From Octopus sinensis (taxonomy: Eukaryota), in contig NC_043018.1 in the NCBI RefSeq assembly GCF_006345805.1, positions 21,700,001 to 21,764,000 on the forward strand: 64,000 bases of DNA, read 5' to 3'. Positions 831-58,979 of the stretch are shown here, piece after piece. The notes under the pieces are model-generated. The model did not search any database. It saw nothing but the letters and a program-made list of their open reading frames with translations, and had not been told where the DNA came from. Numbering within the stretch: position 1 is the first letter of the stretch; each line of letters begins with the position of its first letter. The translations under genes and the position numbers were made by a program.

Positions 831-1010
831 TTGAAAGAAAAGAGCTCAAAGTATAACATCAGAAAGGGACTATCAGTGAAATACGAATGTTCTTCCAACA
901 GCAGCAGAAAATGTGGACTATGTTTAGCAGAGAAGAAACTGACAGAATCCCTTATACTTGGATTATATCTCAATGTTAAATCAAAACATTTAAAATTAGA
1001 ATATACATGA
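831..1010 (+). mobile_element. Degenerate Penelope-like element, GIY-YIG endonuclease C-terminal remnant
   Basis: Manual translation LKEKSSKYNIRKGLSVKYECSSNSSRKCGLCLAEKK...LNVKS matches the PLE pattern L.EK...YNI.W.I......SN.S..C.LCL.EK....LN.RS. Confidence 0.6.
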
Positions 1011-1160
1011 GAGGAAGTACATGCTCAGATACTGGTCTAGGCCACAGTAGGAGAGTCAGTGCCATTGCTCCATCTATCTCACACACACGCATACATATAT
1101 ATGTGAGTATGTGTATGTATGTATGTCTGTGTATGTATGTATGTATGTATGTATGTATGT

Positions 1161-1478
1161 ATCTGGCACCTGTGTCGGTGGCACATAAAAAACACCATCC
1201 GAGCGTGGCCGTCTGGCACCTGTGTCGGTGGCACATAAAAAACACCATCCGAGCGTGGCCGTTTGCCAGCCTCGTCTGGCACCTGTGTCGGTGGCACATA
1301 AAATCACCCACTACACTCTCGGAGTGGTTGGCGTTAGGAAGGGCATCCAGCTGTAGAAACACTGCCAGATCTGACTGGCCTGGTGCAGCCTTTGGGCTCC
1401 CCAGACCCCAGTTGAACCGTCCAACCCATGCTAGCATGGAAAGCGGACGTTAAATGATGATGATGATGATGATGATGA
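1161..1478 (+). mobile_element. Family A (5'-truncated RTE 3'UTR) with internal tandem units
   Basis: gttggcgttaggaagggcatccagctgtagaaac core and (GAT)n tail. Confidence 0.8.
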
Positions 1479-5700: not shown

Positions 5701-6095
5701 TAAATACTGAGATTAAAAGGTAGGGGCAAATTATGCCTACCTAATCTACAAAAAAATATATATTTTGCATTTTATGCAAAGTAATCAGAGTAACCTTCAT
5801 AATTTTATTGAATTCTGTGCATATTCTGCCAGAAAAGGAAAATGTTACTATTGATCTATTATTTTCAGGGTAGGCACTGCTTTCCTTGCCTACCTAGGTG
5901 GCATTCATGTATATATGTATGTCTGTGCACATGTATCAGTATGTGCACATGTATGTATGTGTATAGATGTACTATATATGTGCATGTGTGTATGGGGGGT
6001 TCTCTTCAGTTTTTGATTATCTGAAGTATTCTTGTAAGGAAGGACTGTGTGAACCTATTAATATATGTATAGATATATATAAGAATGTATGCATA

Positions 6096-6146
<51 letters not shown>

Positions 6147-6188
6147 AATGTGTATGCGTGTTGTGTAATACATACATACATACATACA

Positions 6189-6224
<36 letters not shown>

Positions 6225-6863
6225 TATATCATCATAAAATATGAATTAAGATAAAACCACTATTATGCAACTCAAACAGTGATAGAAATAAACCAATACA
6301 TAAACAACAAATAATATAAATATAATTAATATAATATATAATATATATATATATGTAATTTTTTTTTTCTCAAAAAGTATAAAAAGAATGATAAATATAA
6401 TATAATAAGTAAAAACACTACGTACGTTTCATGACTATATATAAATATATATATAATGTTAGTACATGTGTGTAGAAATGCATGTATGTAAGTATGTTTG
6501 TAGAAAGATGTATATGTATGTCGTCAGCTGATTTGTTTAAAGAGTCATCTCAGAGCAAATGGGTGTATGATTGCAAGAAGTTTGACCGACCAAACTGACA
6601 AAACAACCATTGTGTTGACAATATTTTTTCATTTGTTTTTGGAACCTGTTTTGGGTGGAATGCAGAAATATAGGTTTACGTCCTTCTTAATTGACAATTA
6701 CCATTCTCTGAGTCAGAAAATATATTTATATTTTACAAAATAAATTTACATTTTTTTCCTTGTTCTTCTTTGCGTACACACACGCGCATGCGTGCACACA
6801 TACATACACACACAAACACGTACATGTGTGTGGGTGTGTTTGTGCCTGTGTGTGAGTATATAC

Positions 6864-8424: not shown

Positions 8425-8716
8425 TCATCATCATCATCATCATCATCGTTTAACGTCCGCTTTCCATGCTAGCATGGGTTGGACGGTTCAACTGGGGTCT
8501 GGGAAGCCCGAAGGCTGCACCAGCAGTCAGATGTGGCAGTGGTTTTCTACCGCTGGATGCCCTTCCTAACGCCAACCACTCCGAGAGTGTAGTGGGTGAT
8601 TTTATGTGCCACCGACACAGGTGCCAGACGAGGCTGGCAGACGGCACGCTCGATGGTGTTTTTTATGTGCCACCGACACAGGTGCCAGACGAGGCTGGCA
8701 GACGGCCACGCTCGGA
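8425..8716 (-). mobile_element. Family A copy
   Basis: (CAT)n-cgtttaacgtccgctttccatgctagc start and about 60-bp units. Confidence 0.8.
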
Positions 8717-8893
8717 ATATATATATATTATTATATTATATATATATATATATACTATATATTATATATATATGCAGTGCTTCTTCAGTTTTCCCAAGCT
8801 TTTTCCCAGTAAAAGAACTTGGAAAAATTGGACCTCCAGCCAGGCCTTTGCAATACCCTTAAAGCCGGAACTTTTAGCACCCTTCATATATAT

Positions 8894-8954
<61 letters not shown>

Positions 8955-9113
8955 ATATATGTACACACACAACACACACATGTTTATGTGTATATGCTTG
9001 TGGTATGGAATGTAAACAGGATTATTATACTATATCTTAGACATAAATCTTTTGTACAATCAACCTCCTTCTGGTTGACTGTTTTTGGGTTTGGATTTAC
9101 TTTCTTGTCTCAG

Positions 9114-9158
9114 CTCACTGACAAACTCAGTCAACCATGAAAAAATTGGTTCTTTCCG
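9114..9158 (+). other. Candidate 45-nt exon (phase 2-2, SLTNSVNHEKIGSFR)
   Basis: tttactttcttgtctcag acceptor and CG|gtattt donor. Only the phase-2 frame is open; compatible with the 1853 microexon. Confidence 0.3.
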
Positions 9159-12420: not shown

Positions 12421-13529
12421 ATGTGTGTAATATGAAACCCATTTTGTTGTTGACTTTCTTGTTATACTGAAGTCTATGAATATGGAAGCAACTGGAATAT
12501 AATTTTGGCATGATGGTTCCGTGTGTAATCGGAAAGAATTTTAGAACTGCAAAAGTTTCTGCAATGCAGAAGCTGTTCTAAATGCAAACATCTTCCAAAG
12601 ATTCTGGGATCAATTCAATTGGAATAAAATTCTCACTGCTACAAAATAAATAAATAAATAAATCACTTTTGAAGGAACAAGCATGGCTTTAGTGGTTAAG
12701 ACGCTTGCTTTGTAACCAGTTCGTTTCAGGTTCAGTCCCACTGTGCAGCACCTGTATATAAAAGGGTAAAGGGTAAAGAACCCCTTCGGTCATGAATGAC
12801 CATGGGATTGCACCGAGAATGTTCCCCTCCAAGGCACAAGTCTGGGCAGGGTTGTTTATAGAAGACCAGAAGTCACCAATGCATACCATTCTCCAATCTC
12901 CATGCCACCAATGTTATCCAAGGGAAAGGCAAAGGGGCCAATACAGTTTGGGGCCAATCACATCACAACTCATATCGATGGCTGAGTGAATTGGAGCAAT
13001 GTGAAAATAAAGTGTCTTGATCAAGAACACAACACATAACAAGTCCAGGAATCGAACTCACAACCTCATGGTTGTGAGCCTGACGCTCTAACCACTGAGC
13101 CACCAATAACCTTCATGTGTATGTGGTGTGTGTGTGTTGGGGGGGTGCATGTGTGTGTGTTGTGTTTGTCCCTTACCACTTCTAGACAACTGGTGTCGGT
13201 TTATTTATGTCCCCATAACTTAGCAGTTCAACAAAGAGACTGACAGAATAAGCTGAAGAATAAGATAAAGAATAACTATTGGGGTCGATTTCTTTGACTA
13301 AACTCTTGAAGGTGGTGCTCCAGTATGGTTGCATTCCAACAACTGGAAACAGAGATCAAAGATACAAACTCTTTACTGTTTTTTTTTTTCCTCAGATGTG
13401 GTCCCTGTATGTTGGACTTGGTGACTAAATAGTAGGAGCAGGGACAAGAAGGGTACCCAGCCGTGAAGACCCTACTTCAGAGAACAAGCCTAACCCATGT
13501 GGAAGGGAAATGTTTCTGCCATCACCACA

Positions 13530-13645
13530 GATGATGACGACGATGATGATGATGATGATGACGATGAGGGGGAGGATGGGGATTGTGGTGGTAGTAGTGG
13601 CAATTGAGGAGGAGGAAGATGGTTGTGGTGATAGTGATGGTGATA

Positions 13646-13701
<56 letters not shown>

Positions 13702-13895
13702 GAAGATGATGATGATGAAGGTGATGATGATGATGATAGTAGTAGTGGTGGTAGTGATGGTGGTGGTGGTGGTGGTGGTGGTGGTGGTGGTGGTGATGTC
13801 AGTGGTTGTGGTACTGTTGCTGCTGATGCTGTTGCTGCTGCTGGTGGTATTGCTGGTGGTGGTGATAATGATGATGATGATGATGATGATGATGG
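13530..13895. repeat. (GAT)n/(GGT)n/(GCT)n trinucleotide field
   Basis: Seen directly. Confidence 0.9.
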
Positions 13896-14114
13896 TGGCT
13901 TTACTTCCATCTCAAACCACCATGTAACCAACCCTCCCTTCTAAAATACCCCTCATCAGTAAATGACACCCCCACCTCAAAAGCTACCCTGCATTATATA
14001 ACGACAAGCCATCTCTTGTCTTAAAGTCTGTCTGCTCCCATCGCATAAAAAGCATCCCTTTTCTGTAGAAACCCAACAAAAAAAAATGAAAAATAAAAAA
14101 AAAATACAGACATA

Positions 14115-19335: not shown

Positions 19336-19914
19336 TTGTAAATTTTGGTATGAAAAATCTGATTTGTATTCTGGAAAATATGATAATTTTAAACTCCAGG
19401 CTTTAGGTTTCTCTGGCTTAAAGGGACCCTCCCACCTCCCACCAATGCTTGCTTGTCTCCACTTCACAAGCTTGGAAGGGGCCTGAACCATGGCTCATAT
19501 TGACACTTACATAATCCACCCCTGGCCATGACTAACAATTGTTTTATCAATCCCATGACTGTGACTAACAATTATTTTAATCAGTCACAGAGTTATGACT
19601 AACAATTATTCTAACAATTCGGAATGAAGAAAAAAAGCCAAATTTGTCATTGGTGGATCATGAAGTCAGAACATAAAGGCATCATGTCTAAATGTCACAT
19701 ATGATCAATTATAAACCAACACAGCAACCTCTACATGATACTTCAATCTGCTAGATATAGCAGTCAAATCTCTGAATCATTGGTTCTCAAAAATGACAAT
19801 TACCAGCCAACCCACCAAAAATAGGGTAATATTCACCCCTTGCCTTCATTAATGAGAAGATGAAATAGAATTTACATCTTCATCATTCTTATTTCTTCAC
19901 CAAGGCAATAGATA

Positions 19915-20235
19915 TCATCATCATCATTGTTTAACGTCCATTTTCCATGCTAGCATGGGTTGGACGGTTCGACCAGGGTCTGGGAAGCCAGGAGGCTGCA
20001 CCAGGCTCCAGTCTGATCTGGCAGTGTTTCTACAGCTGGATGCCCTTCCTAACGCCAACCACTCCATGAGTGTAGTGGGTGCTTTTTACGTGCCACTGGC
20101 ACAGGGGCCAGAGGAGGCTGGCGATGTCCACGATTGGTTGGTGCTTTTTATGTGCCACTGGCACAGACGCCAGTCAAGGTGGCACTGGCATTGGCGACGT
20201 TTAGATGCTGTTTTTTACGTGCCACCAGCATGGAT
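19915..20235 (-). mobile_element. Family A copy
   Basis: Same core sequence. Confidence 0.75.
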
Positions 20236-21105
20236 GTCACAACTACAATTTCCATTTGATTTTTATTTTAATATTGATGTACTTGACTCAATAGATCTCC
20301 TCAAGAACAGTGGGTCACCCTACGATCCAAGGTAAGCACAGCAGGCCGTCCTGTGAGCCATGAACTCACTTTATTTGTCGGATCTTCACAGTCGACATGT
20401 TTAACTTTTTAATGTTTAAACTGACCATATCAGTCCAAAATATTCTGCCTGTTTTATCTTGAAAGTGGCTAAATCTGGTCTCTCACACTCACCCTAAAAT
20501 ACTATTCACACTGTCGAAATCTCAAAGTCACAAGATTTGATGTCAATATTATTCTTGTTGACAAGGTGGCAAGCTTGGCACAATCCTAAACACACCAGAC
20601 AAAATGCTTAGTGGCATTTCATCCATCCTTACATTCTGAGTTCAAATCCCACCAAGGTCCACTTTGCCTTTCATCCTTTCGGAGTCGATAAAATAAGTAC
20701 CAGTTGAGTACTGGGGTTGATGTAATTGACTTATTCCTTCCCCAGAATTTACTGGCCTTGTGCCAAAATTTGACGTCAATATTATTATTCTTGTTGACAA
20801 GGCGGCAAGCTGACACAATCCTAAGCACACCAGACGAAATGCCCAGTGGCATTTCATCTATCTTCACGTTCTGAGTTCAAATCCCGCTGAAGTCCACTTA
20901 AACATTCATCAGTTTGAGAGTCAACAAAATAAGTACCAGTTATACACTGGGGTCAATGTAATTGACTAACCCTCTCCCTACAACAAATTTCAGGTTTTGT
21001 GCCTAGAGTATGAAGAATTATAAAGGATCATTAATTGCCAGACTTATTAGAACATTAGCAAAAATATGTCTAACTAATTACAATAGTTTTGGTCAATAGA
21101 GTACC

Positions 21106-21336: not shown

Positions 21337-21619
21337 TTTGGTCAATAGAGTACCAGTAATATCATGGGGTGGTCTGTGATTGGCCTCCTCACTGCCATCA
21401 AACTCATGGAATTATTATTAAGAGCTTTGTTAACGACTGGTAATTAGCTGATTGACTGACCAACTGGCCAACTGACCGTAGTAGTTTTGGTCAACAGAAT
21501 GAAGGAGAAAAGTTGTGTGTCTCAATAAATTATGGAATTTAATGTCTGGCTTTATAATAAATGGTATCTGGTGGAAGCGACATCTTCTTGTCTTCTTTTG
21601 CAAGAATGGCGGTGGTGAT

Positions 21620-21851
21620 CACATGGTGATGGTGTTTGTAGTAGCAGTGGTGGTGGTGGTGGTGGTATGTTGATTGTATCGATGCTGGTGCTGGTGGTAG
21701 TGTTGGTAGGACAGCGTGGTGGAGCTAGTGGTGATAGTGATGGTATCATAATGGTGGTAGTGGTAGCAATGATTATGGTGGTGGTGGTGGTGGTTGAAAT
21801 GACATGATAGTGATGATATTGGTGGTGGTGGTGATGGTGGTGGTGGTGGTG

Positions 21852-21895
<44 letters not shown>

Positions 21896-21896
21896 C

Positions 21897-21950
<54 letters not shown>

Positions 21951-23213
21951 TTTGTGGTGGTGGTGGTGTTAGTGACAGTATAGTGATTATGCTGGGGCAG
22001 GGCAGGGTCAATGATGGTGGTGGTGATTATAGTGGTGGCGGTGGTGGTGGTGGTGGTGGTGGTGGTGGTGCGTATGTGTGTGTAGTGGAGCATAATGGTA
22101 GATCGATGGTGGTGGCAATGGACTGCTGACCATCTTGGTGATGATGTTGGCTGTGATAATAACGACGACATTAGAGGTGCCAGTGGGTGGTGTCGATGGA
22201 TGGTGTTGCTGGCAGCAATGGTCACTAAGAGAGAGAGAGAGAGAGAGAGAGAAGCAGACTGATTGATGCTGTGTTCACATTCCACACGAGGAAGAAGAGA
22301 TAGAAACCAACTTTCAGTCTGGAAGAGATGGAATCTAATTACCACTGCGGCAGTTTTTATGACAAATATCCAGCACAGAGGAACGATGACAGGTTGGCTG
22401 TGTGTGTGTGCGTGCATGTGTGTGCGTGTGTGTGTGCGTGTGTGTGTGCATGTGTGTGTGTGTGCATGTGTGTGTGTGTGTGTGCAAGTGAACGTGTGTG
22501 TGTGTGTGTGTGTGTGCATCTGTCAGTGTACATGAGTCTGTATGTGTGTGTGTGTCGATGTGTGTGTGTGTGTGTCGATGTGTGTGTCGATGTGTGTGTG
22601 TGCGTCCATATGTATGTGTCCGTGTACGAGTCTGTATCTGTGTGTGTCGATGTGTGTGTGTGTGTCGATATGTGTGTGTGTGTGTGTGTGAGTCTGTATC
22701 CATGTGTGTGTGTGTGTGTATACAAGTGAATCTGTCTGTCAGTGCATGCATGTGTGTATGTGTACAAGTGAACATATGTATATGTGTGTGTGTGTGTGTC
22801 CATGTATGTGTGAGTCTGTATTTGTGAGTGTGTGCGTGTCTTTCAGTGCACATGTGTGTGCGTGTATGTGTGCAAGTGAAAATATATATATGTGTGTATG
22901 TGTGTGTGTTTATAGTTATGTCTGGTTGCATGTATAGATGTGTGTGTGTGTGTGTGTGTATGCATATAGTTGTGTGTGTACTATGTGTAGTGTATGCATC
23001 CATGTAAGTGTATGTGTGTGTAGCATGTGTATCTGTGTGTGTGTGGATGTGGTTGTCTATATGTGTGCAATTGTTTCTGTGTGTGTATACATGCTGTGTC
23101 TGTATATGCGTGTATGTGTGTGTCCCCGTGCGTGTAACTGTGTATATTAACATGTATGTCTGTGTGTACAGTTGTGTATGTTTGCATGTATATGCTTATT
23201 GTCTAAGTGTATA

Positions 23214-40625: not shown

Positions 40626-40822
40626 TCAGCCAAGATAAACCCTAAAAGAACGCTCTATAGGGGTTCGACAAAGAGGACAGTGCCTGACAGATTTGCCACA
40701 GTCACTACAACACACCAGATGCCCACATGGAATAAACGTAACGTTGATGTCATTATCCATACAGATTTTGCATTGGTTTAATTCTTTCAAATTACGATTT
40801 TCCTCCAAAAGTTCTTCAAGTC
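40626..40822 (-). CDS. IAP terminal exon: coiled region plus C3HC4 RING (RLEELLEENRNLKELNQCKICMDNDINVTFIPCGHLVCCSDCGKSVRHCPLCRTPIERSFRVYLG*)
   Basis: C-x2-C-x11-C-x-H-x3-C-x2-C-x6-C-x2-C spacing with the RING at the extreme C-terminus, typical of IAPs. Acceptor tttctttttctttctctttttag; TGA at 40626-40628. Confidence 0.93.
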
Positions 40823-43800
40823 CTAAAAAGAGAAAGAAAAAGAAACATAAATATATATTTCTTTACTACCCACAAGGGGCTAAACACAGAGAGGACAAAC
40901 AAATGGATTAAGTCAATTATATCGACCCCAGTGCGTAACTGGTACTTATTTAATCGACCCCGAAAGGATGAAAGGCAAAGTCGACCTCGGCGGAATTTGA
41001 ACCCAGAACGTGGCAGCAGACGAAATACTGCTAAGCATTTCGTCTGGCGGGCTAACATTTCTGCCAGCTCACCGCCCAAACATTATATAGTTGACAATAG
41101 TTATTAGGGATGGATGTAAATTTGTTGGCCATGAGATCAACAAAGAGATAGAGAGGAAGGCTTTGTTTGGGATGAAATATATATAAAAGGAGAGTTTACG
41201 AAAATAGACAAAAGACAAAGGCAGGTGGAGTACAAACAAACAAATGTATTAGTATAGCGCTCAGGAATAGAAAAAGTCTTTTACGTTTCGAGCCTACGCT
41301 CTTCGACAGAAAGATATACAGAAAAAAACAAGGAGAGAAAAAAATGTGTGTAGGAGCTGAGAGAGAGAGAGAGCGAGATCTATCAAGGTTACCGAATTAG
41401 GACCAGTTATTAAAAAAAGAAATGAGTGAGAAGAAACAGTAGGGGATGGGTGTAGAACGGATTATATAGATGAAATAAATAAGTGTGCATATACGACAGA
41501 GAGTAAATGATTCAAGGGAAAAACTGGGTACACAGAATGAAGTGGTGAGAAAGGATCTTCAGATGTTGGGTTTCACAAAGGGGATGACAGGAGACTGAGA
41601 CACTCCTGGTTGTTTCCTGTGCTTGAGAAGACACGTCAAGCTCCCTTGCATCCCCCTCCAGCTGAGCATTCCTAATCTTGAGGACTTGTAAGGTGCTGGT
41701 GCCATGTAAAAAGCACCTGTATCGGTGCCACATAAACACACCCATGCTGGTGTTGTGTAAAACCACCCAGTACACCCTGTAAAGTGGTTGGCATTAGGAA
41801 GGGCATCCAGCTGTAGAAACCATACCAAAACAGACATGGAACCTGCACAGCACTTTAGCTGGCCAGCTGCTGTCAAACTGTCCAACCCATACCAGCATAG
41901 AAAACAGACATTAAATGATGATGATGATGATGATGATAATAAGACAAAAAAAAAAGGGAAAGAGCAGTTTTAACTCTTTAGAATTTAAACTGGTCATATC
42001 CGGTTAAAATATTCTACCTATTTTTTTTGTTGAAACTGACCCAATTTGGCCTCTCACACCTACCATACAATGCCATTCTAAAACTACACAATCGCATCAT
42101 TGAAATCTCGTAGCTATGAGATATTGTACGATTAATACAAAACAATGTGAATAAACAAGCAGTGCTTTTGACAGAGTAATCTGAATGCTAAAGGGTTACA
42201 GTCAGTGGTGGTCAGCATCATCATAAACCAATGGAGATGATTGAACTGTTAGATTGAAAATAGCAACAAATAAATAAGAATTAACCTGATTAACCCTTTC
42301 GTTACTGTATATATTTTGAGATGCTCTGTGTTTCTTTCACTTACTTTAAATATAACAAAGAATTTAGTAAAATAACTTAGTTATCATTCAGCTAGTGTTA
42401 GGAACATAAATTGTGACTAAGGTTTGGTGGAAGATTTTAATTCAGAGCTTATGAAAACAAGACATTTGTACTCAGAGCCAGAGGCAGTTTCAGCTGGGTT
42501 GGTACCAAAAGGGTTAAGAATTGTTTCTCTATTATATATTTTAACCCTTTTGTTACCATATTGCTGCTGAGATGCTCTGTGTTTCTTTCAATTACTTTAA
42601 ATATAACAAAGAATTTAGTAAAATAACTTAGTTATCATTAAGCTAGTGTTAGGAACGTAAATTGTGACTAAAGTTTGGTGGAAGATTTTAATTCAAAACT
42701 TATGAAAACAAGACATTTGTACTCAGAGCCAGAGCCGGTTTCAGCCGGGTTGGTATCGAAAGGGGTAATCAATAAATGCGGGCATGGCTGTGTGGTTAGG
42801 AAGCTTGCTTCCTAGCTACATGGTTTCGGGTTCAGTCCCACTGCGTGACACTTTGGGTAAGTGTCTTCCGCTATAGCCCCAAGCCGACCGGAGCTTTGTG
42901 ATTGAATTCGGTAGGTGGAAGTTACTGCCGTGTGTGTATGTGTGCGTATAGCTGCTCAGTGCCTCTCCGAAAGAGTGAGAAAGAATCAAAGAAATTGTCA
43001 GTTCTACAGTTTGTAGATGTCAAGTAAAAGATACAACATCTAGACACACACACAGAGTAGATGCATGTAAGTTGAAATATTCTCAGAACGAAAATCAGTG
43101 AAAGACAAACTTACTCCTTTTTTCTTCAGATTCAGCAGAGTCTTCTTTGCCGTCTTTTGATTCGAGTGTATCGTCTAGTTTGGTCGTGAACGGCGAAGAC
43201 GTGTCAGTATCATCACCTTCCTTTTCCAGACTGCCGATAGATGGCGCCGTTACACTGGACTGGGCTTTGCTTTCCCCACTCACCGACACAGGAGGCAGCT
43301 CATTGATGATCTGGGGAGGGGGAGGAGGTGGTGGTGGTGGAGGGGGCGGCGGCGGTGGAACTGATGTTGGTGGGGGTGGCGGGGGTGGTTGTTGTTGTTG
43401 TTGCTGTTGTTGTTGTTGAGGCTGGGATGGTACCGATGCTGATGGGGATGGTACTGGTGCTGCTGGTAACTGGCTAGTTACCGGCTGCTGTTGTTGTTGT
43501 TGTTGCTGCTGTTGTGGTTGTTGTTGCAGTTGTTGTTGTTGTTGTTGTGGTGTTGGTGTTGGTGGTGGTGGCTGTGGCAAAACAGGCGACTGATGCTGAT
43601 TGGATGAGGGCGAAGGTGAGGTCTGGACTTGAGGTGTCGGGGACGACCGGGGAGACTGCAGGGGCTGCACGGACAGTGGAGCCGCAGCCTGTGGCTGTGG
43701 GGGTTGCGGTTGCGGTGGTGGTGGTGGTGAGTGAAGTTGGTGTGGGTGGGGAGGTAGCGGGGAGTGAGGGGGGACCGATAACGCAACCTGTACTTCACCT

Positions 43801-46800
43801 GGTGAAGGTGGTGAAGACAGTTGCTGCTGCTGCTGCTGGTGTTGTTGCTGCTGCTGCTGTTGCTGCTGCTGATGATGTTGCTGCTGCTGTTGTTGTTGGT
43901 GATGCTGCATTGATGCTGGCAGCTGTGGGTGTGGCTGCATGTGCAACTGCTGTTGCTGCTGCGAAGGTGGAGACAATGTCTGTTGCTGCTGCAGCTGCTG
44001 CTGTTGTTGTTGTTGTTGCTGCAGCTGCATGGTTGCTAACGGCAACAACGAGCTTGACGATGGTTGCAAATGTGAAGGAGAAGGGAGAGGCGGTTGTGCA
44101 GAAGTACTCCTGATTGCATGTGTGAGTACAGACCCAGCTGCAGCAGCGGCTGCAATTGAAGACGATGACGACGACGACGACGACGAAGAGGAGGAGGAGG
44201 ATGACTGCTGTGGTTGTGGTGGTGGTGGTAGCTGTTGGTGGTGATGGTGGTGATGGTGTTGTTGTTGTTGTTGCTGCTGCTGCTGCTGTTGGGAGTGTCG
44301 CACAATCGATGAAACAGCCGCAGAAGACAAATGCTGCTGCGATTGCCTTGCATTCGACCGATGCTGGTGCACGTGGCGCTGAGATGACGAAGGATTTGTC
44401 TGTTGAAGGGCAGATGACAATGATGATGGCGATGACGATGACGATGATGACGACGACGATGATGATGGTTGTGGTTGTGGCTGTGGTGGCGGCGAACGTG
44501 GTGGTTGTGACAGAGATGTACAAACACTTGTCCTTTGTTGATCACTAACTACAGTGCGCTGTTGTTGTTGCTGCTGCTGCTGTTGCTGTTGGTGCTGCTG
44601 CTGCTGCTGCTGTTGATGTTGGTGCTGCAACTGCTGCAGATGCTGAATCTGTTGTCTATGGTGCATCCACTGATGACGTTCTTCGTCTTCAGAGTCCGTA
44701 TCTTCCAGAGCTCGGTACATTACTTCACGACTTACAAAGTTTTCCCCTTTATCAAAAAAAAAAAAAAAAGAAAAATCACAATACATAAAAAAAAAAGAAA
44801 AAAAAGAAGAAAGAAATCCTCCCTGCCCCCCACAACCTTGTTTGACATCATTCAGCTCCTGAAGTCAGTCCTGATTCTGTTGACAAATCATCGAAGATGT
44901 CCTAGTCATTGCCCTCTAGTCTTTTACCGAGACCTATACCGAGGGTACAACAGCAAGACAGACTCACAAAGAGGGGCCTTGCAGGGACAGGCGACCTTTT
45001 GGAAACCCAGATCAAGAAGACGAAATAAGATTGGGACACACCCAATGGAAAACCTGTTTCCAACACTACAGGCAAGCTTTCCAATGGACAACCCCAAGGG
45101 AGACATGGAAGCATGGCAGACCAAAAACAAGGAGAAAGTCCACAGAAACTGAAGCACTAACAGGCAGCTACACTTGGGGACAACTGCAATCTAGTGCCAA
45201 AGATTGAGACTGAATGCAGCCCCTTATTGGCATCCAATGCTCCACATGGAGTCAAAAGAATTAAGAAGAAATCATCATCATCATCATCGTTTAACGTCCG
45301 CTTTCCATGCTAGCATGGGTTGGACAGTTCGACCGGGATCTGGGAAGCCAGAAGGCTGCACCAGGCTCCAGTCTGATCTGGCAGTGTTTCTACAGCTGGA
45401 TGCCCTTCCTAATGCCAACCACTCCGTGAGTGTAGTGGGAGCTTTTTACGTGCCCTGGATTACATTATTAATGTGCCCTTTTAAAAGATGGCTGGATATG
45501 AGTTGAGTAAGATTTGGTTGCTATTTCTAGCAGGTTGAACTACTGTGTAAAAGCTTCCTCGGGTGATCTTTCCAGTTGAGACACTGGAAACAGACCAAAT
45601 TAACTCAATATATCAGGTCCAAGTATAGGCTATGTGATTGAGAAGTTCATTCCACAGCCCTGTGGTGCCAGCTTTCAATCCCAATGCGCAGCACCATGTG
45701 GAAAGCAAAACTTGGGAGTCAGAAACTGGTTGGTCGGTTGGTTGGTGGGTGTGTGAAAAATTATAATTACTAGCAGTATCGCCCGGTGTTGCTCGGGTTT
45801 GTAAGGGAAATAACTATATAAGCATTTTTAGAGAGTTACTTCCCTTATATAACCCAAGCAAAAATCATTAAAAATGCGGAAAAATGATGGTAAATTTTTT
45901 TTTTAATCGTAGACTCATCGTAGACGCGCGCTAATACCCAGAAGGGCTCGATATGAATGACGACTATAAGATAGCCGCTTTTGGTTAAACTGCACCGCAA
46001 AATGTGGGAGTAGTTAGGAATCTAAATCGGAGGAGACAGAGTCTCAAACACACAACTTCAATTTTATATATAAAGATTAGTATTTTGCTAAAAATGGTCA
46101 TGGATGTTGGGTAAAATAACAAAAGAGCATGACTGCAAATGCAAGCGGTTGAAATGGGGTTCCTCCAAGGGAACTCTTATGTAACATTACTTGACAGGGA
46201 GCATAGCATGCAGATCAGACTACTCTTCAGGTTGAACTGCTATTTCTCTGCATTGAGAGATCACAGCTCAGGTACCATGAACAAGCAATTAGAATGTCAC
46301 AGGAAATAATCACAAAACTGGTTCTTCAAGTTGAGCCAATGGGTAGGAGCCATATGGAGGAGACCAAGGATGAGATAGTTGGATAATATCCAGTCTCAGT
46401 TGGCCGTGCTTGGGAATTTGGCCAGAAAGTGTAAATGTCAGCTGCTTCTAATAGAACCTTATTAAAGAGAAGACTGATGACTCTACCCCAATGACCGTCC
46501 CAAGAATAGCAAGTAGAGAAGAAATTTAAAGAGATGAGGAATTATGTACATTATTTACATTCATCGGATTTTGTCCTCATCTTGTTTGTTGTTAACACAA
46601 CGTTTCGGCTGATATACCTTCCAGCCTTCATCAGGTGTCTTGGGGAAATTATGAACCTGGGTTCTCATTCTCATTAGGAATGAGAACCCAGGTTCAAAAT
46701 TTCCCCAAGACACTCGAAGAAGGCTGGAAGGTATATCAGCCGAGACGTTGTGTTAACAACAAACAAGATGAGGGGCCTTCCAAATTTGTTTTAAGAAAAT

Positions 46801-49800
46801 ATTTTTTAAAGAACTGATCAAAAGCTATGTGCAGTGTAGCACTATTAGAAACAAGAATGAGAAAAAGAGTGAAATCACACACCAGTACTTTGCAGTTGTT
46901 TCTTTAAGACTTTCCGAATCCTTCGTTCACTATAACCATTCTCTAAGAAGGTCAGCACACGAGGCTGCTGCAGACATAATTGCAGTTTACTTCTCCAGGA
47001 TTCAGAAGCTGTTAACAAAACCAAAAAAAGAATATTTAGAAAATTCTGAAAAATCACATGGCAAAGAAGTCAGTGTTTTCTTGGTGTTACCACTTTATTG
47101 TAAGTTTATATGTGTGTATGTATGTTTTTATTTTTCACTTTTTAATTTAGAGTTCATTTTAACTGGCCAGCTAGCTGCTTGGTAAGTAAGTTTCTCAAGG
47201 AAAGCATCTTGTTTTGTTCCATTATCTTTAGATTTTAACGGTCTTGTGAATTTTTATTGTTGTGATCATTTGTAAGGAATTAAGGAGCTGCATGATCAAC
47301 CATATTTTGTTCCAGGTGGGTTGTTACATGTCCTGTTGCTCCAATAATACCAGTTATGAATGAAACTGAAAGTCTATCTATTTGCAATGATCCAGAAATG
47401 TTTTCTTTCTCCTGTATTTTTCTGACATCATAGTGTCCAGGGGCCAGCTGATTTACATAACATAGCATTTTTTTTCTTGTGCTCCTACACAAAAATACCT
47501 GGCCCCATTTTTTTTTTTGTCTTTGACACATTAAATTCCAATATAATTGTAATCTACACCATCTGAAAGTATTTGCAAAAAATATCATTAAAAAATACCT
47601 ATTTTCCTGAAAGTCATGAGAAGACAAATAGGGGGTGGAAGAATACACTTCTGTAATTAAGTTCAATCGACATAAGTAAATTAGATCCTGTTTTCCTATT
47701 CAGCTTTCTATTTCAAAAACACCACCCAACAAATATGAAAGAATATTGGAATCAACTTAATTTAGATGACACTGGATTAAAATTATAATTTGTAGGAAGT
47801 AATGTTGCTAATATTGGCAACTCCAGAAAATGTTAAACTAACCCACAGTAAATTGAAATACTGCAGTGAATAAGACTTGTGAGTGAAGCATGTACTTGAA
47901 ATATTCAATAATAAAAGGAAGTTCAAAACAGCATTTTGATAAAAATATATCAACACTGGAATTTATACAAATTTTTCAGACAATCTAACATTAATAACTG
48001 CTTTTAGTATAAGTTATATAATTCCAGCTAATTAATAAGCAACTTTCCCCCATTATATATTTCTTTACTACCCACAAGGGGCTAAACACAGAGGGGACAA
48101 ACAAGGACAGACAAACGGATTAAGTCGATCACATCGACCCCAGTGCGTAACTGGTACTTTATTTATCGACCCCGAAAGGATGAAAGGCAAAGTCGACCTC
48201 GGCGGAATTTGAACTCAGAACGTAACAGCAGACGAAATACGGCTACGCATTTCGCCCGGCATGCCAACGTTTCTGCCAACTCGCCGCCTTTCCCCCATTA
48301 TAGTACTTATTATTATTATAGAGTGAGAGAGCAGTGTGTGCCATCAAAGTGACAGTGGGGTACAAATATATGAAGCCCAATATACCCATCATGACTACTC
48401 ATCTGATAACATGGATCACAACCATATGTGCACAACAAGGTGATCTCATATCAAGATAGTGTATGACCTCATAGGTGGGGCCTAGTTACAATTTTCATCA
48501 GATCAAGTAGCCCATCCCATTCAAAAGGTCCCTGAATAAGGGTTGTTTAAGGATGTAGAAGAAAACACTCATGTTTCCACAGGTGAATTATTCAAACCCC
48601 AAAGAATTCTTCTCAACACATGGTTGATGCTCTCCCACTACTTCTGATCATGATCAGAGATGCACATATCGTCAGCCACCAAGTGACATGCTTAACTGAT
48701 TACGGTCAAACAACTGACAAAGCAAATCTGTGGTACTGAGCAGAATAGTTGCTGCAGCCCATCTTGTGCTTGGCAACTATGGCACTACATCTGACCACAA
48801 TTTCCCCATGCACCACATTGGGAATCCCTGCTCTATATACAACCTTTATGTAGTAGAAAAGCTACATCCCCACTTGAAATACAGGAGTCCTCTACGGTCT
48901 TTCCCTAGGACTACAATATGCAAGGTACTCATAGCCATTCTTCTCAATGCAAGACAAGGTAGCAACAGTAAAATAAACAATAAAATACTTACTTGTTTCT
49001 TGAGAAGAAGGAACATGTAACTGCAAAGAAATAGAGAAATACAATGATGAGTATACTGAGATGACACAATACAACTTATTGTATAAGATTTACAGGCAAA
49101 ACATAACAAACAAGGCTGGTTTTGATATTCTGAATTATGCTCCCTGTCTAATAACAATGAAAAAATTACTGTCACATCGTAGCATGAGTGTGCCTCTATG
49201 TGGTCACTCAACATGCTAAAAATAGCAGTAAGATCTCTCCCAACTGATCATAATATCATTTAAGAAAAAAAAAGGGTGGAGGCATATTTGATTATGTAGT
49301 TCTAGATACACTATTAAATGATTGAAAATGTAAGATGTGTTGTTAATTAATCAAGTTATAATTTTTCAAATTGTTAATCACCATCTATGAAAATGAAACT
49401 TTTTATATTACTTGCAACATCCCTCTCTACTCCCCACTAAGTCGAGAGGTTTTGTCTTGTGAGTATCCGATGACCCTGACTAGTGTCATGTAAAAAGTAT
49501 CCAATATGGTCTAAAATGTAGTTGGTGTTAGGAAGGTCATCAAGAAGTCAGAAGACACTGGAGTTTGGTGCAGTTGTCTCGCTTACCAGCTCCTGGTCAG
49601 CTGTCCAAGCCATGCCAACGAAACAGAAATGATGATGATGTCTACACAATGTTTTCATCTGTTGATCATTGACCATTATTTGATGGTCTTATTCCTAGAT
49701 ATGTAAATAATACCAGACGGGATTCAAATTAAGTGCCTTTATTTCAAAAACAGAAGGCTGCAAACACCAACCAGGCTACAGAAGCAGGAGAGTAAGAATT

Positions 49801-51353: not shown

Positions 51354-51490
51354 CAAAACAAAAAACACACCCATGATGAAATTCTACTCACTGGACGGTA
51401 CTTGTCTGTTTGCTGGGTGGGGTCCTTTTTGCAAACTTTTGCTTCTCTCCAGTCATTGGGCTCGATACCAAGGAGCCTATGGGGCTGGAT
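40626..51490 (-). CDS. Inhibitor of apoptosis (IAP/BIRC, cIAP/XIAP-like) E3 ligase, 3' partial: join(complement 51392-51490, 48993-49020, 46883-47008, 43115-44746, 40626-40822)
   Basis: Five GT-AG bounded exons with consistent phases (0-0, 0-1, 1-1, 1-1, 1-stop), 2082 nt = 693 aa plus stop. IAP-type UBA followed by a terminal IAP-type RING. No BIR exon seen in the window. Confidence 0.85.
40853..41077 (-). mobile_element. SINE family C, abutting the IAP last-exon acceptor
   Basis: Same sequence as the other C copies. Additional copies at 11805-12030 (-) and 16775-17000, 20560-20765, 20800-21010 (+, older). Confidence 0.85.
41185..41400. mobile_element. Penelope-like non-autonomous fragment with hammerhead-like motif (41279-41313, minus)
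   Basis: Same family as 5160-5330. Minus strand reads CUUU-CUGUCGA-A-GAGC-GUAG-GCUC-GAAA-CG-UA-AAAG. Confidence 0.6.
41510..41937 (+). mobile_element. RTE-clade LINE 3' end: ORF C-terminus, 3'UTR (family A body) and (GAT)n tail
   Basis: 41533-41640 translates EVVRKDLQMLGFTKGMTGD*...VLEKTRQA, directly followed by ggttggcattaggaagggcatccagc...gacattaaatgatgat. Confidence 0.75.
42290..42768 (+). mobile_element. Two head-to-tail piggyBac-type MITEs (family G)
   Basis: TTAA-CCCTTT...AAAGGG-TTAA ends at 42290-42517 and 42541-42768. Further copies at 27142-27370 (-) and 63896-64000 (partial). Confidence 0.8.
43115..44746 (-). CDS. IAP 1632-nt exon: second half of UBA (GENFVSREVMYRALED) followed by a polyQ/P/S/H/A linker
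   Basis: Acceptor (t)n-gataaag at 44747 and donor A|gtaagt at 43114. Phase 1-1, 544 codons, open in only one frame over the full length. The N-terminus resembles the cIAP UBA segment GENY..V..LV..LL.AEDE. Confidence 0.82.
44850..45268 (+). mobile_element. RTE LINE 3' ORF remnant (frameshifted)
   Basis: Fragments W.PQG...GRPK..RR..E.E...TWGQLQ..AKD...CSTW are typical of the RTE RT C-terminus. Confidence 0.6.
45272..45456 (-). mobile_element. Family A copy in IAP intron
   Basis: Same core sequence. Confidence 0.8.
45770..46076 (-). mobile_element. Non-autonomous Helitron
   Basis: On the minus strand: 5' A|TC start, subterminal hairpin cccgagcaacaccggg and CTAG|T end. Confidence 0.8.
46130..46520 (+). 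mobile_element. RTE LINE 3' ORF remnant
   Basis: Fragments LQAVEMGFL...IERSQLRY...ITKLVLQVEPMGR...RPRMR.LDNI. Confidence 0.6.
46575..46773. mobile_element. Fold-back (palindromic) Penelope-derived element
   Basis: About 96-bp arms with 5 mismatches and a 7-nt loop (46671-46677). Confidence 0.8.
46594..46639 (-). ncRNA. Minimal type I hammerhead ribozyme motif
   Basis: GACAC-CUGAUGA-A-GGCUG(GAAGGUAUAU)CAGCC-GAAA-CG-UU-GUGUU: intact core, stems I and II, and a palindromic AACGUU stem III. Confidence 0.65.
46883..47008 (-). CDS. IAP exon, first half of UBA (SESWRSKLQLCLQQPRVLTFLENGYSERRIRKVLKKQLQST)
   Basis: Acceptor ttttggttttgttaacag and donor G|gtgtgt; 126 nt, phase 1-1. LENGYS..RIRKVL..QL.STG aligns by eye with the IAP UBA motif LEMGF....VKQ.V..KI..TG and joins in frame to GENF. 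Confidence 0.88.
48058..48287 (-). mobile_element. SINE family C with 15-bp TSD
   Basis: TSD ctttcccccattata at 48043-48057 and 48288-48302. Confidence 0.9.
48993..49020 (-). CDS. IAP 28-nt microexon (LHVPSSQET)
   Basis: Strong acceptor tttctctatttctttgcag and donor A|gtaagta. Phase 0-1 bridges the two neighbouring exons. Confidence 0.72.
49915..50145 (-). mobile_element. Family A copy (diverged)
   Basis: Same core sequence. Confidence 0.7.
50347..50743 (+). mobile_element. Non-autonomous Helitron (same family, with an internal duplication)
   Basis: A|TCTTTATATATAAA start, cccgagcaacgctggg hairpin and CTAG|T end. Confidence 0.8.
50994..51100. mobile_element. Small MITE-like element with 21-bp TIR
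   Basis: aatatggctaaccactaaggg / cccttagtggttaaccatatt; related partial copy at 24020-24100. Confidence 0.55.
51392..51490 (-). CDS. IAP 99-nt exon (IQPHRLLGIEPNDWREAKVCKKDPTQQTDKYRP)
   Basis: Acceptor ttttgttttattttaaacag and donor CCA|gtgagta. Phase 0-0, open, unique sequence. Confidence 0.72.
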
Positions 51491-53262: not shown

Positions 53263-53695
53263 ATCATCATCATCATCATCATCATCATTTAGCGTCCGCT
53301 TTCCATGCTAGCATGGGTTGGACGGGTCAACTGGGGTCTGTGAAGCTGGAAGGCTTCGTCAGGCCCAGTCAGATCTGGCAGTGTTTCTACGGCTGGATGC
53401 CCTTCCTAACGCCAACCACTCCGCGAGTGTAGTGGGTGTTTTTTACGTGCCACCTGCACAGGTGCCAGACAGAGCTGACGAACGGATGGTGCTTTTACGT
53501 GTCACCGGCACGGGGCCAGGCGATGCTGGCAACGGACACGAACGGATGGTGCTTTTACGTGCCACCGACACGGGGCCAGACAGAGCTGGCAAACGGCCAC
53601 GAACGGACGGTGCTTTTACGTGTCACCGGCATGGGGGCCAGCCGAGGCTGACAACGAACACGAACGGATGGTGCTTTTACGTGCCACCGACACAA
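53263..53695 (-). mobile_element. Family A copy with 60/61-bp VNTR
   Basis: gatggtgcttttacgtg recurs at about 53485, 53545, 53606 and 53667. Confidence 0.85.
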
Positions 53696-54084
53696 TGTTG
53701 CACATTATTCTTCATTGAGAGAGAGAGAGAGAGAGCTCATGTAATTCATCATCATCAGCATTTAACATCCACTTTTCCATGCTTGCATGAGTTGGACAGG
53801 ACTTGCTGAGGCAGATTTTCTACAACCAGATGGTCTTACTGTTGTTAAACCCTTTCCTGCTTTCAAGCAAAGTAATATTTCACCATGGCTGGGCATTTTT
53901 TTTTCACAGAAGGCAGGAAACCCACAACACTGCCTGTATGACAGTGATGCTCATTTACAACCATCACATGACGTCAAAACAAGAGTACAACAACAACACA
54001 CACACACACATGCAATGGGCTTCTTTCAGTTTCCATCTCCAAAACCACAACATCATGAATGCAACACCCTAACCAATAGGCCAC

Positions 54085-57699: not shown

Positions 57700-58090
57700 C
57701 ATCATCATCATCTTCGTTTAGCGTCCGCTGTCCATGCTAGCATGGGTTGGACGGTTCAACTGGGGTCTGGGAAGCCAGAAGGCTGCACCAGGCCCAGTCT
57801 GATCTGGCAGTGTTTCTACGGCTGGATGCCTTTCCTAACGCCAACCACTCCGTGAGTGTAGTGGGTGCTTTTTATGTGCCACCCGCACAGGTGCCAGACG
57901 AGGCTGGCAACGGCCACGGTTGGATGGTGCTTTTTACATGCCACCGGCATGGGGGCCAGGCGAGGCTGGCAACGGCCACAATCAGATGGTGCCACCAGCA
58001 CGAGGCCATTCGGGGCGGCGCTGGCAATGGCCACGTTTGGATGGTTCTCTTACATACCACCGGCACTGGTATCACAGCTGCAATTTCCAT
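57700..58090 (-). mobile_element. Family A copy with internal units
   Basis: Same core sequence. Confidence 0.8.
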
Positions 58091-58979
58091 TCTATCCACA
58101 AATAATATATATATTATCATCCTTTAAATCCATTTTCAATGCTGGCATGGGTTGGATGGTTTAACCAGAGCTGGCAAGTTGGAGAACTGCAACAGGTTCC
58201 AGACACTCTCACATTTGTACAAATATGTAGATAAATGCAAGTAATTGCATGTGCGCATGCACACATGCACACGCACACACAAAGTGGATCCCATTTGGTA
58301 TTTAGGTAGAGTCAGACTAAGTACATGCACTATTAATAATTCACTCCATTATTTGTGCTATTAGTATAGAATTATTTTTGTGACATTCCTGTCACCTTTA
58401 CAATGGTCTCTACCAGGCTGAATAATTAATAGAATGATTGAGATAACATGTTGTAAACACAGTAAAGGCCAGTCTAGTATGAGAAGAAAAAAACACAATG
58501 TTAAAAATTGTTATAGTAATGATGATAACAGCATGATGATTGGTGACGAACATTAATGATGGTGGTTGTTTAGTCACAGGCCAAAGACATTCCAACAGTG
58601 ACCATCCCCATCAAATTCCTTTATTTTAAATCAATCAAGGTCATAGGCAAGTGCAGATATTATTTTAAATAATATTAAACTCATTAATATGTTTATCATT
58701 TCAGTGCTTTAACTTTCTATATTCATTAGGTTTCGGGTTCAGTCCCACTGCGTGACACTTTGAGTAGGTGTCTTCCTATAGCCCTGAGTCAACCGAAGCT
58801 TTGTGATTGAATTCGGTAGGCGGAAGTTACGGCCATGTGTGTATATGTGCTCAGTGCCTCTCCGAAAGAGAGGGAGGGATAACCGGACATCAGTTATATC
58901 CTCATAAACTTTGACAAACTATATAATTCCTATTTCATGTGTACAAAAAAAAAAAAAAATAAAAAAATAAAATCAATAT

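What the first reader, a model, noticed from the sequence alone, without database searches (positions are those of the whole stretch)
43115..44746. IAP with a ~530-aa polyQ/polyP/polyS/polyH linker in one exon, between UBA and RING
Seen: a single 1632-nt, phase 1-1 exon built from CAG/CAA/CCA/TCA runs. It stays open in only one frame, so repeat indels appear to be in-frame. It starts with the second half of the UBA and ends just before the RING exon. Known: vertebrate cIAP1/2 carry a CARD at this position and XIAP has a short linker. Inference: an intrinsically disordered, prion-like spacer replaces the CARD and could drive condensate formation or tune RING dimerisation and ubiquitin reach. 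It may also be length-polymorphic.
Basis: partly seen in the sequence, partly recalled or inferred. Interest (0 to 1): 0.75.

Follow-up and report, generated by a model that had tools for sequence, protein, structure and literature searches.

The report
Octopus IAP with giant disordered linker
The 1632-base stretch is a real coding exon of an octopus cell-death regulator (an IAP-type ubiquitin ligase); it encodes a long floppy spacer rich in glutamine, proline and serine, which cuttlefish mRNA also carries, so it is an unusual but not revolutionary variant of a well-known protein family.

Summary
Observation confirmed. Window 44746..43115 (minus strand) is a 1632-nt exon, phase 1-1, with an AG acceptor and a GTAAGT donor. 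It has no stops in its own frame, against 8 and 13 in the other two sense frames (dinucleotide-shuffle P about 0.0005).

The genome matches Octopus sinensis. The gene has seven coding exons over about 101 kb and encodes 1183 aa: BIR1, BIR2, a Ser-rich stretch, a UBA-like segment, a linker of about 525 aa (Q 27%, S 17%, P 17%, H 6%), then a RING. Both BIR exons lie outside the window.

Public RNA-seq contigs of the cuttlefish Sepia esculenta hold the full-length orthologue (1019-1021 aa). They run unbroken across both predicted junctions and keep the whole linker.

The linker ends are 76-79% identical between octopus and cuttlefish. The core cannot be aligned and is about 160 aa shorter in Sepia. 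Sepia contigs differ only by in-frame indels.

No CARD or other fold was detected, and AlphaFold confidence is low. The disordered spacer at the CARD position is supported. The prion or condensate reading was not tested, and the composition (17% Pro, 1% Asn, almost no aromatics) argues against a classical prion domain. It is a new variant of a known kind, of moderate interest.

The parts
43115..44746 (-). Coding exon 6 (the finding). It is 1632 nt, phase 1-1, and encodes residues 575-1119 of the 1183-aa model: the last helix of the UBA-like segment plus the Q/P/S/H-rich linker.
   Evidence: Splice signals read directly. No stops in frame against 8 and 13 in the other sense frames, shuffle P about 0.0005. 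Matches Sepia cDNA at both ends.
44613..44746 (-). Conserved N-terminal island of exon 6 (first 45 aa). It holds UBA helix 3 (ENFVSREVMYRALE), the acidic stretch DTDSEDEE, and RHQWMHHRQQIQHLQQL, which starts a predicted Q-rich helix.
   Evidence: 34 of 45 residues are identical to Sepia. The alignment to the XIAP UBA (2kna) runs across the exon 5/6 junction. AF2 predicts a helix over residues 18-78 of the exon, with pLDDT about 60-80 over residues 11-80.
43326..44612 (-). Hypervariable low-complexity core of the linker (429 aa: polyQ, polyS, polyP, polyH and polyA runs).
   Evidence: Only 31% of the octopus residues find an identical partner in Sepia, and 159 residues are octopus-only. Triplet arrays are imperfect. 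Most 10-residue blocks of the core average pLDDT below 50; an exception is about 65 at exon residues 461-480. No Pfam family.
43115..43325 (-). Conserved C-terminal island of exon 6 (last 70 aa): PPQIINELPPVSVSGESKAQSS...EKEGDDTDTSSPFTTKLDDTLESKDGKEDSAESEEKR.
   Evidence: 55 of 70 residues are identical to Sepia. This island gave the only specific hit among 1.84 billion representative proteins (P0006, E=1.5e-12).
40626..40822 (-). Coding exon 7: the pre-RING helix, the C3HC4 RING and the C-terminal tail, including the TGA stop at 40626-40628.
   Evidence: Acceptor tttttag|GA. Pfam zf-C3HC4_3 E=2.8e-14. cIAP2 RING 3eb5 E=1.7e-18. 100% amino-acid and 84% nucleotide identity to Sepia. Single copy in the genome.
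46883..47008 (-). Coding exon 5 (126 nt, phase 1-1): the first helices of the UBA-like segment (SESWRSKLQLCLQQPRVLTFLENGYSERRIRKVLKKQLQSTG).
   Evidence: Splice signals. Best PDB hits are the XIAP UBA (E=0.0023) and cIAP1 (E=0.0062). Pfam UBA_BIRC2-3 is the top hit but below its cut-off. No paralogous copy was found in the genome.
48993..49020 (-). Coding exon 4: a 28-nt micro-exon (LHVPSSQET plus one base), needed to restore the reading phase between exons 3 and 5.
   Evidence: Found by scanning AG..GT segments against the Sepia cDNA peptide LHATPSQES. Flanked by tttgcag| and |gtaagt. The full model is in frame only when it is included.
51392..51490 (-). Coding exon 3 (99 nt, phase 0-0): IQPHRLLGIEPNDWREAKVCKKDPTQQTDKYRP.
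   Evidence: tblastn of the Sepia ORF gives 69% identity over a 42-residue HSP that runs past the exon's 5' end. Signals aaacag| and |gtgagt.

Best explanation
The exon is a genuine coding exon of the only UBA-bearing IAP that these searches found in the Octopus sinensis genome. The protein is a cIAP/XIAP-type E3 ubiquitin ligase.

**What the exon encodes.** It encodes the last helix of the UBA-like segment and then an intrinsically disordered spacer of about 525 residues, rich in glutamine, proline, serine and histidine. The spacer tethers the N-terminal binding module (BIR1, BIR2, UBA) to the C-terminal catalytic RING.

**Shown**
- The exon structure and the open frame.
- The domain identities of the flanking exons.
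- Inclusion of the whole linker in cuttlefish mRNA.
- Conservation of about 45 aa at the N end and about 70 aa at the C end of the linker across the octopus-cuttlefish split.
- A core that keeps its composition but not its sequence or length.

**Inferred**
- The core grows and shrinks by in-frame triplet slippage. It acts mainly as a flexible, length-tolerant spacer.
- The conserved islands carry the specific functions, such as docking or regulatory sites next to the UBA and the RING.
- Because no CARD is present, the CARD-dependent closed, auto-inhibited state described for cIAP1 cannot operate. RING dimerisation would then be governed by the tether and by partners.
For: - **Exon.** Canonical splice signals and exact coordinates. 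Only one open frame, shuffle P about 0.0005.
- **Gene model.** A seven-exon model with all AG/GT boundaries gives an uninterrupted 1183-aa protein.
- **Domains.** Pfam BIR x2 and RING. PDB best hits are cIAP1 BIR3, XIAP BIR2, the cIAP2 and cIAP1 RINGs, and the XIAP and cIAP1 UBA domains.
- **Transcripts.** Independent Logan RNA-seq contigs (L018-L022, L028) contain a 1019-1021-aa ORF colinear with all seven octopus exons, including the whole linker. The C-terminal product P0013 is indexed in 76 blocks of the collection.
- **Species of the contigs.** Runs SRR19578113 and the SRR239361xx block are Sepia esculenta.
- **Conservation by region.** Identity is 76-100% outside the core and 31% in the core, with about 160 extra residues in octopus.
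- **Indels.** All six linker indels among Sepia contigs are multiples of 3.
- **No fold in the linker.** No Pfam family in the exon. AF2 mean pLDDT 44.8.
- **Uniqueness.** The UBA exon and the RING exon have no close paralogue.
- **Contrast.** The nearest IAP paralogue examined has a linker of about 130 aa without polyQ.
Against: - No RNA evidence from O. sinensis itself could be obtained.
- Donor-like and acceptor-like sites exist inside the exon. One in-frame pair (GT at 44735, AG ending at 43311) would remove 475 codons, so partial splicing in octopus is not excluded.
- Logan contigs are short-read assemblies. Low-complexity stretches can be collapsed, so the exact lengths are provisional.
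- The UBA assignment is below Pfam's threshold, and the fold search was uninformative.
- In-frame indels are what triplet slippage produces anyway, so they do not prove selection.
- Low pLDDT from a single-sequence model is only a proxy for disorder.
- The functional statements (spacer, loss of CARD-type auto-inhibition) are inference from the literature on cIAP1 (PMC8869227, citing Lopez et al. 2011).
Confidence: 0.75

Rival explanations
1. The linker is a prion-like or condensate-forming module. The polyQ, polyH and polyS tracts would drive self-association or phase separation, which would concentrate the ligase or promote RING dimerisation.
For: - 27% Gln, with eleven polyQ runs of 5 or more residues, and a His7 run.
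- A Q-rich helix predicted directly after the UBA-like segment in both species. This could form coiled coils.
- The low-complexity character has been retained since the octopus-cuttlefish split.
Against: - 17% Pro, including P15 and P7 runs. Only 5 Asn, 1 Tyr, 2 Phe and 7 Gly in 545 residues. This is unlike yeast-type prion domains and poor in aromatic 'stickers'.
- PolyQ content is not conserved. Sepia has 19.5% Q with a longest run of 6, against 27% and 11 in octopus.
Confidence: 0.12
2. Part of the exon behaves as an exitron, or the whole exon is a cassette. The exon is phase 1-1 and contains in-frame cryptic sites. A substantial share of octopus transcripts might therefore lack most of the linker, giving a short XIAP-like isoform.
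For: - The exon is symmetrical (phase 1-1), so skipping it keeps the frame.
- An internal donor-like site GAAAACTTT|gtaagt (GT at 44735) and a strong pyrimidine-rich acceptor ...cctccccag|ATC (exon resumes at 43310) are both phase 0 and 1425 nt apart.
- Octopus has about 160 residues more than Sepia.
Against: - Every Sepia contig that reaches far enough upstream keeps the full linker.
- Exact look-ups for eight products of an exon-6-skipping Sepia transcript found nothing. This is a weak negative.
- The would-be donor lies inside the conserved UBA helix 3, which Sepia mRNA retains.
Confidence: 0.1
3. The open frame is a by-product of simple-sequence DNA or of an assembly or annotation error, and is not translated.
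For: - Low-complexity DNA elsewhere in the window gives ORFs of 130-250 aa in several frames on both strands, for example 13425-13944 and 21552-22522.
- The RefSeq protein could not be retrieved for comparison.
Against: - The frame is open for 544 codons in one frame only.
- It is flanked by canonical sites that join a UBA half and a RING in phase.
- Both ends are conserved at protein level, with 72-85% nucleotide identity in the flanking exons, in cuttlefish mRNA.
Confidence: 0.02

Closest known systems
Vertebrate cIAP1/cIAP2 (BIRC2/BIRC3)
   Same: - BIR2 matches cIAP1 BIR3 best among isolated BIR-domain structures (E=1.2e-23); multi-BIR NAIP chains score higher overall.
- The RING matches the cIAP2 and cIAP1 RINGs best (1.7e-18 and 1.8e-17) and includes the C-terminal tail.
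- A UBA-like segment sits between the last BIR and the RING.
   Different: - Two BIRs instead of three.
- No CARD. In cIAP1 (3t6p) the UBA and RING matches are about 115 residues apart. Here they are about 530 apart and the interval is low-complexity.
XIAP (BIRC4) and, from general knowledge, Drosophila DIAP2
   Same: - The architecture is BIR, UBA, RING without a CARD.
- BIR1 matches XIAP BIR2 (E=9e-17).
- The UBA-like segment matches the XIAP UBA 2kna best (E=0.0023).
   Different: XIAP joins the UBA to the RING with a short linker of tens of residues (general knowledge). The octopus protein has about 525 residues and the cuttlefish protein about 365.
Bivalve 'BIRC2/3-like' IAPs (PMC8917759)
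   Same: These are molluscan IAPs with two BIRs, sometimes a UBA, and a C-terminal RING.
   Different: The oyster proteins carry a death-fold domain (DD) between the BIR or UBA and the RING. None is detectable here. Orthology to those oyster clusters was not tested.
PolyQ-polyP low-complexity regions such as huntingtin exon 1 or transcription-factor Q-rich regions
   Same: - CAG/CAA-mixed polyQ next to polyP.
- A Leu-preceded Q-rich helix, as described for the androgen receptor (title and abstract of PMC6497633, listed; the Leu detail is general knowledge).
- Evolution by triplet slippage.
   Different: Here the region is a spacer between two functional modules of an E3 ligase. No single pure tract exceeds 6 repeat units.

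Membership tests
IAP (BIR-containing) family | At least one BIR domain (zinc-binding C-C-H-C fold) | tested here: met
   Pfam PF00653 matches twice in the spliced model (E=7.6e-38). The BIR exons are on the same strand, 4.2-4.9 kb and about 77-78 kb beyond the window. They are joined to the window's exons in Sepia cDNA.
RING-bearing IAP E3 ligases (cIAP/XIAP/ML-IAP type) | A C-terminal C3HC4 RING of the IAP subtype, at the very C-terminus | tested here: met
   zf-C3HC4_3 E=2.8e-14. cIAP2, cIAP1 and XIAP RING structures are the best PDB hits, aligned to the last residue but one.
UBA-bearing IAPs (cIAP1/2, XIAP, DIAP2) | A UBA domain between the last BIR and the RING | tested here: inconclusive
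   - The top PDB sequence hits are the XIAP UBA (E=0.0023) and cIAP1 (E=0.0062).
- A two-sequence profile gives E=0.0034.
- Pfam UBA_BIRC2-3 is the best family but scores 16.4 bits against a cut-off of 27.2.
- AF2 of the Sepia segment gives four short helices with block-mean pLDDT about 69-83, but Foldseek finds nothing significant.
- The ubiquitin-binding loop reads NGY instead of MGF (the MGF motif is from general knowledge).
cIAP1/cIAP2 subfamily | A CARD between the UBA and the RING | tested here: not met
   No CARD, Death or any other Pfam family in the exon at E<=10 or in the full model at E<=1. AF2 shows no compact domain.
Intrinsically disordered low-complexity linker | Biased composition and no stable fold | tested here: met
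   Q, S, P and H make up 68% of residues. AF2 mean pLDDT is 44.8, with 403 of 543 residues below 50. This is a single-sequence proxy only.
Prion-like domain (yeast-prion/PLAAC sense) | Q/N-rich, poor in Pro and in charged residues, and scored by the PLAAC HMM | not tested
   PLAAC was not available. The composition is Q-rich but has 0.9% Asn and 17% Pro, which does not fit the classical profile.
Constitutive coding exon | Present in mature mRNA with the predicted junctions | tested here: met
   Met for the Sepia esculenta orthologue: six long contigs from five or more runs keep the full linker and both junction sequences. For O. sinensis itself this could not be tested with these tools.

The most novel reading that the evidence does not exclude
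In coleoid cephalopods the death-fold (CARD/DD) regulator of cIAP-type ligases may have been replaced, more than about 250 million years ago, by a selected self-associating Q/P/S/H-rich module. The length of this module would be tuned by triplet slippage, and the adjoining RING would be recoded by A-to-I editing. Together these would give a tunable switch for RING dimerisation and cell-death or immune signalling.
Probability: 0.08. Interest if true: 0.6.

Novelty: new variant of a known kind. Interest (0 to 1): 0.35.

Why it matters
IAP ligases are controlled by how their BIR, UBA and RING modules are held together. In cIAP1 a CARD locks the protein shut.

A natural IAP in which this position is filled by a disordered spacer of 365-525 residues, kept for the whole history of coleoids yet free to change length, is a ready-made test case. 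It can show how tether length and composition affect RING dimerisation, auto-ubiquitination and substrate reach.

It also gives a corrected seven-exon, 101-kb gene model. The model includes a 28-nt micro-exon and a BIR domain split by a 72-kb intron, both of which automatic annotation can easily miss.

It does not open a long-standing question. Low-complexity insertions in regulatory proteins are common.

Tried and rejected
1. **Word-indexed protein searches.** Three searches found no cephalopod full-length protein. The queries were the full model, the C-terminal region, and the 120-aa Sepia piece. The gene caller behind that database splits these low-complexity transcripts into fragments.
2. 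**Exact look-ups.** Look-ups of the 1183-aa octopus model, of Met-started sub-ORFs, of the Sepia full-length protein and of eight exon-6-skipping Sepia products all returned nothing.
3. **First gene model.** My first model joined exon 2 directly to the UBA exon. It failed on phase. The Sepia cDNA then revealed exon 3 and the micro-exon 4.
4. **Structure prediction of the spliced octopus C-terminus.** The contiguous exon and a Sepia cDNA segment were used instead.
5. **Foldseek of the UBA model.** It gave only noise.
6. **Other hits of the representative search.** P0007-P0012 are unrelated polyQ or polyP proteins.
7. **Supplement of the oyster IAP paper.** It did not list this octopus protein in usable form.
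8. **Pfam hit CIS_TMP.** It falls in the low-complexity region (23.6 bits, below cut-off) and is a composition artefact.


Full report
**Where the window comes from.** The window is G000:C22:21,700,001-21,764,000 of a genome of 2,719,151,902 bp in 13,516 contigs. These figures match Octopus sinensis GCA_006345805.1 as tabulated in PMC8917759.

**The observation.** On the minus strand, 44746..43115 is bounded by a T-rich tract plus AG (44748-44747) and by AAGGA|gtaagt.
- It is 1632 nt long, which is 544 codons, with phase 1 at both ends.
- It has no stop in its own frame. The other two sense frames have 8 and 13 stops, and the antisense frames have 8, 32 and 18.
- In 2000 dinucleotide-preserving shuffles a given frame carried 7.6 stops on average, and only 0.05% were open.
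- The product has Q 148, S 94, P 93 and H 33 out of 545 residues. The longest runs are Q11, S16, P15 and H7.
- The codons are mixed (CAG 80, CAA 68). The longest pure triplet tract is six units, and Tandem Repeats Finder reports only imperfect arrays (62-100% matches).

So this is an old, interrupted low-complexity coding region, not a fresh microsatellite expansion. As an internal control, other simple-sequence stretches of the window (13425-13944 and 21552-22522) are open for only 130-250 codons, and in several frames at once.

**The gene.** The window contains no BIR.
- A Pfam BIR search of the whole genome found two matches on the same strand just beyond the window.
- One exon (L015 5117-4334) starts with ATG directly after an in-frame TGA. 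It encodes BIR1 and the first half of BIR2.
- A second exon (L013 4934-4249) encodes the rest of BIR2 and a Ser/Asn-rich stretch.
- My first attempt to join this to the UBA exon failed on reading phase.
- The answer came from transcripts of a relative (see the next section). They showed two more small exons in the window: 51490-51392, and a 28-nt micro-exon at 49020-48993.
- The final model has seven coding exons, all with AG/GT boundaries. It spans about 101.5 kb and encodes 1183 aa.
- Pfam finds BIR twice (E=7.6e-38) and zf-C3HC4_3 (E=2.8e-14).
- Against solved structures, BIR2 is closest to cIAP1 BIR3 among isolated BIR domains (1.2e-23), although multi-BIR NAIP chains score higher overall. 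BIR1 is closest to XIAP BIR2 (9e-17), and the RING to the cIAP2 and cIAP1 RINGs (1.7e-18 and 1.8e-17).
- The segment across the exon 5/6 junction is closest to the XIAP UBA (2kna, E=0.0023) and the cIAP1 UBA (3t6p, E=0.0062).
- The UBA call stays weak. Pfam UBA_BIRC2-3 is the top family but scores 16.4 bits against a cut-off of 27.2. A two-species profile does not improve the score. A Foldseek search with an AF2 model of the Sepia segment gave no significant match.
- Neither the UBA exon nor the RING exon has a close paralogue in the genome. This is therefore the only UBA-bearing IAP these searches found in O. sinensis.

**Transcript evidence from a relative.** A search of 1.84 billion representative proteins with the exon's translation gave one specific hit. 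P0006 is 120 aa. Its first 55 residues are 81% identical to the end of the exon, and the rest is identical to the RING exon. The two parts are joined exactly as predicted (SEEKR-R-LEELL).
- Its cluster members lie on Logan assemblies of RNA-seq runs. P0013 is indexed in 76 blocks of the collection.
- Contigs L018 and L019 (3.5 kb) hold a complete ORF of 1019-1021 aa. It is colinear with all seven octopus exons.
- Run SRR19578113 (L023) is published as Sepia esculenta (PMC9538352). The SRR23936169-82 runs are published as S. esculenta larvae, PRJNA947123 (PMC10571815, PMC10442824). The contigs from SRR23936168, 78 and 79 are 99.6-99.9% identical to them.
- Nucleotide identity to the octopus exons is 72-85%, and there is no UTR match. 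This fits a deep octopus-cuttlefish divergence with strong purifying selection.

**Pattern of conservation (alignment A1).**

| Region | Identity to Sepia |
|---|---|
| BIR1 region | 88% |
| Inter-BIR stretch | 83% |
| BIR2 | 93% |
| Ser-rich remainder of exon 2 | 82% |
| Exons 3 and 4 | 76% |
| UBA-like segment | 79% |
| RING exon | 100% |
| Exon 6, first 45 residues | 34 of 45 identical |
| Exon 6, last 70 residues | 55 of 70 identical |
| Exon 6, 429-residue core | 31% of octopus residues identical |

- In the core, 159 residues are octopus-only.
- The exon-6 equivalent is 383-385 aa in Sepia against 544 in octopus.
- Sepia has less Gln (19.5%, longest run 6) but an even longer polyP run (17).
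- Sepia contigs from different runs differ inside the linker by indels of 6, 3, 6, 3, 9 and 3 nt, all multiples of three.
- Triplet slippage produces in-frame indels by itself, so this is compatible with selection on the frame but does not prove it.

**Structure.** No Pfam family matches the exon product at E<=10. A single-sequence AlphaFold model has mean pLDDT 44.8, with 403 of 543 residues below 50. Only Q-rich helices are predicted. The most confident one directly follows the UBA-like helix 3, and the Sepia segment shows the same helix. There is no CARD or other death-fold domain.

**Interpretation.** The best-supported reading is a disordered tether between the binding module (BIR-BIR-UBA) and the catalytic RING of a cIAP/XIAP-type ligase.
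- The tether has two conserved islands that probably carry specific sites. The core is constrained only in composition and approximate size.
- In cIAP1 the UBA and RING landmarks are about 115 residues apart (3t6p coordinates). The CARD between them regulates activating dimerisation (PMC8869227, citing Lopez et al. 2011). That mechanism cannot apply here.
- Oyster UBA-bearing IAPs keep a death-fold domain before the RING (PMC8917759). This makes a replacement in the cephalopod lineage plausible, but orthology was not established.
The composition (17% Pro, 0.9% Asn, almost no aromatic residues) and the poor conservation of the polyQ runs speak against a classical prion-like domain.

**What is not excluded.** No octopus RNA data were reachable. 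The exon contains donor-like and acceptor-like sites. One in-frame pair (GT at 44735 and an acceptor ending at 43311) would remove 475 codons. Sepia mRNAs do not use the equivalent sites, and exact look-ups for exon-skipping products found nothing, but that is weak negative evidence.

**Verdict.** The IAP and linker reading is right. The mechanistic ideas are speculative. The feature is a new architectural variant of a well-known family, conserved across coleoids, and of moderate interest.

Noticed in passing
window 40683-40685 (minus strand, AGG = Arg1165 in the RING); seen in L028-L031 and L017: Sepia RNA-seq contigs from other runs differ from the main form only by A-to-G changes. AGG becomes GGG (Arg to Gly in the RING motif SVRHCP). 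In two contigs the adjacent GTA becomes GTG. In one contig AGT becomes GGT (Ser to Gly) in the linker tail. Clustered A-to-G differences are the signature of A-to-I RNA editing, which is widespread in coleoids. The octopus genome has the same AGG codon.
   Followed up: partly
L015 4334 to L013 4934 (C22:21,841,334 to 21,768,934): The second BIR domain is split by an intron of about 72 kb. The whole gene spans about 101.5 kb for a 3.55-kb coding sequence.
   Followed up: yes
window 48993-49020: A 28-nt micro-exon is needed to keep the reading frame. Gene predictors can easily miss it.
   Followed up: yes
window 44735 and 43310 (minus strand): A donor-like site (ACTTT|gtaagt) and a strong pyrimidine-rich acceptor (cctccccag|ATC) lie inside the exon. 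Both are phase 0 and they are 1425 nt apart. They could define an in-frame exitron.
   Followed up: partly
window 13425-13944 and 21552-22522: These are simple-sequence blocks (polyS, polyP, polyT, polyH or polyD when translated) that are open in several frames on both strands. They look like non-coding microsatellite DNA and served as an internal contrast to the exon.
   Followed up: partly
window 976-1449, 8454-9140, 19856-20335, 45195-45506, 53312-53809, 57741-58127 and others: A dispersed repeat recurs whose translation reads ...SDLAVFLQLDALPNANHS.SVVG.FYVP... A second recurs reading ...PRKDERQSRPRRNLNSERNGRRNTA.HF... Both fill the introns of this gene on both strands. They are presumably SINE-like or other transposable elements.
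   Followed up: no
L016 (C2:205,226,001-205,236,000): The nearest IAP paralogue examined has a Ser-rich linker of about 130 aa, with no polyQ and no detectable UBA, before its RING. The locus between its last BIR and that linker exon also holds a 221-codon open tandem repeat of the heptad NPYPLPT (5841-6506).
   Followed up: partly
L013 4249-4750 (exon 2, residues about 321-490): The Ser/Asn/Gln-rich stretch after BIR2 looks disordered, yet it is 82% identical between octopus and cuttlefish. This is a sharp contrast with the linker core and suggests it carries conserved binding motifs.
   Followed up: partly
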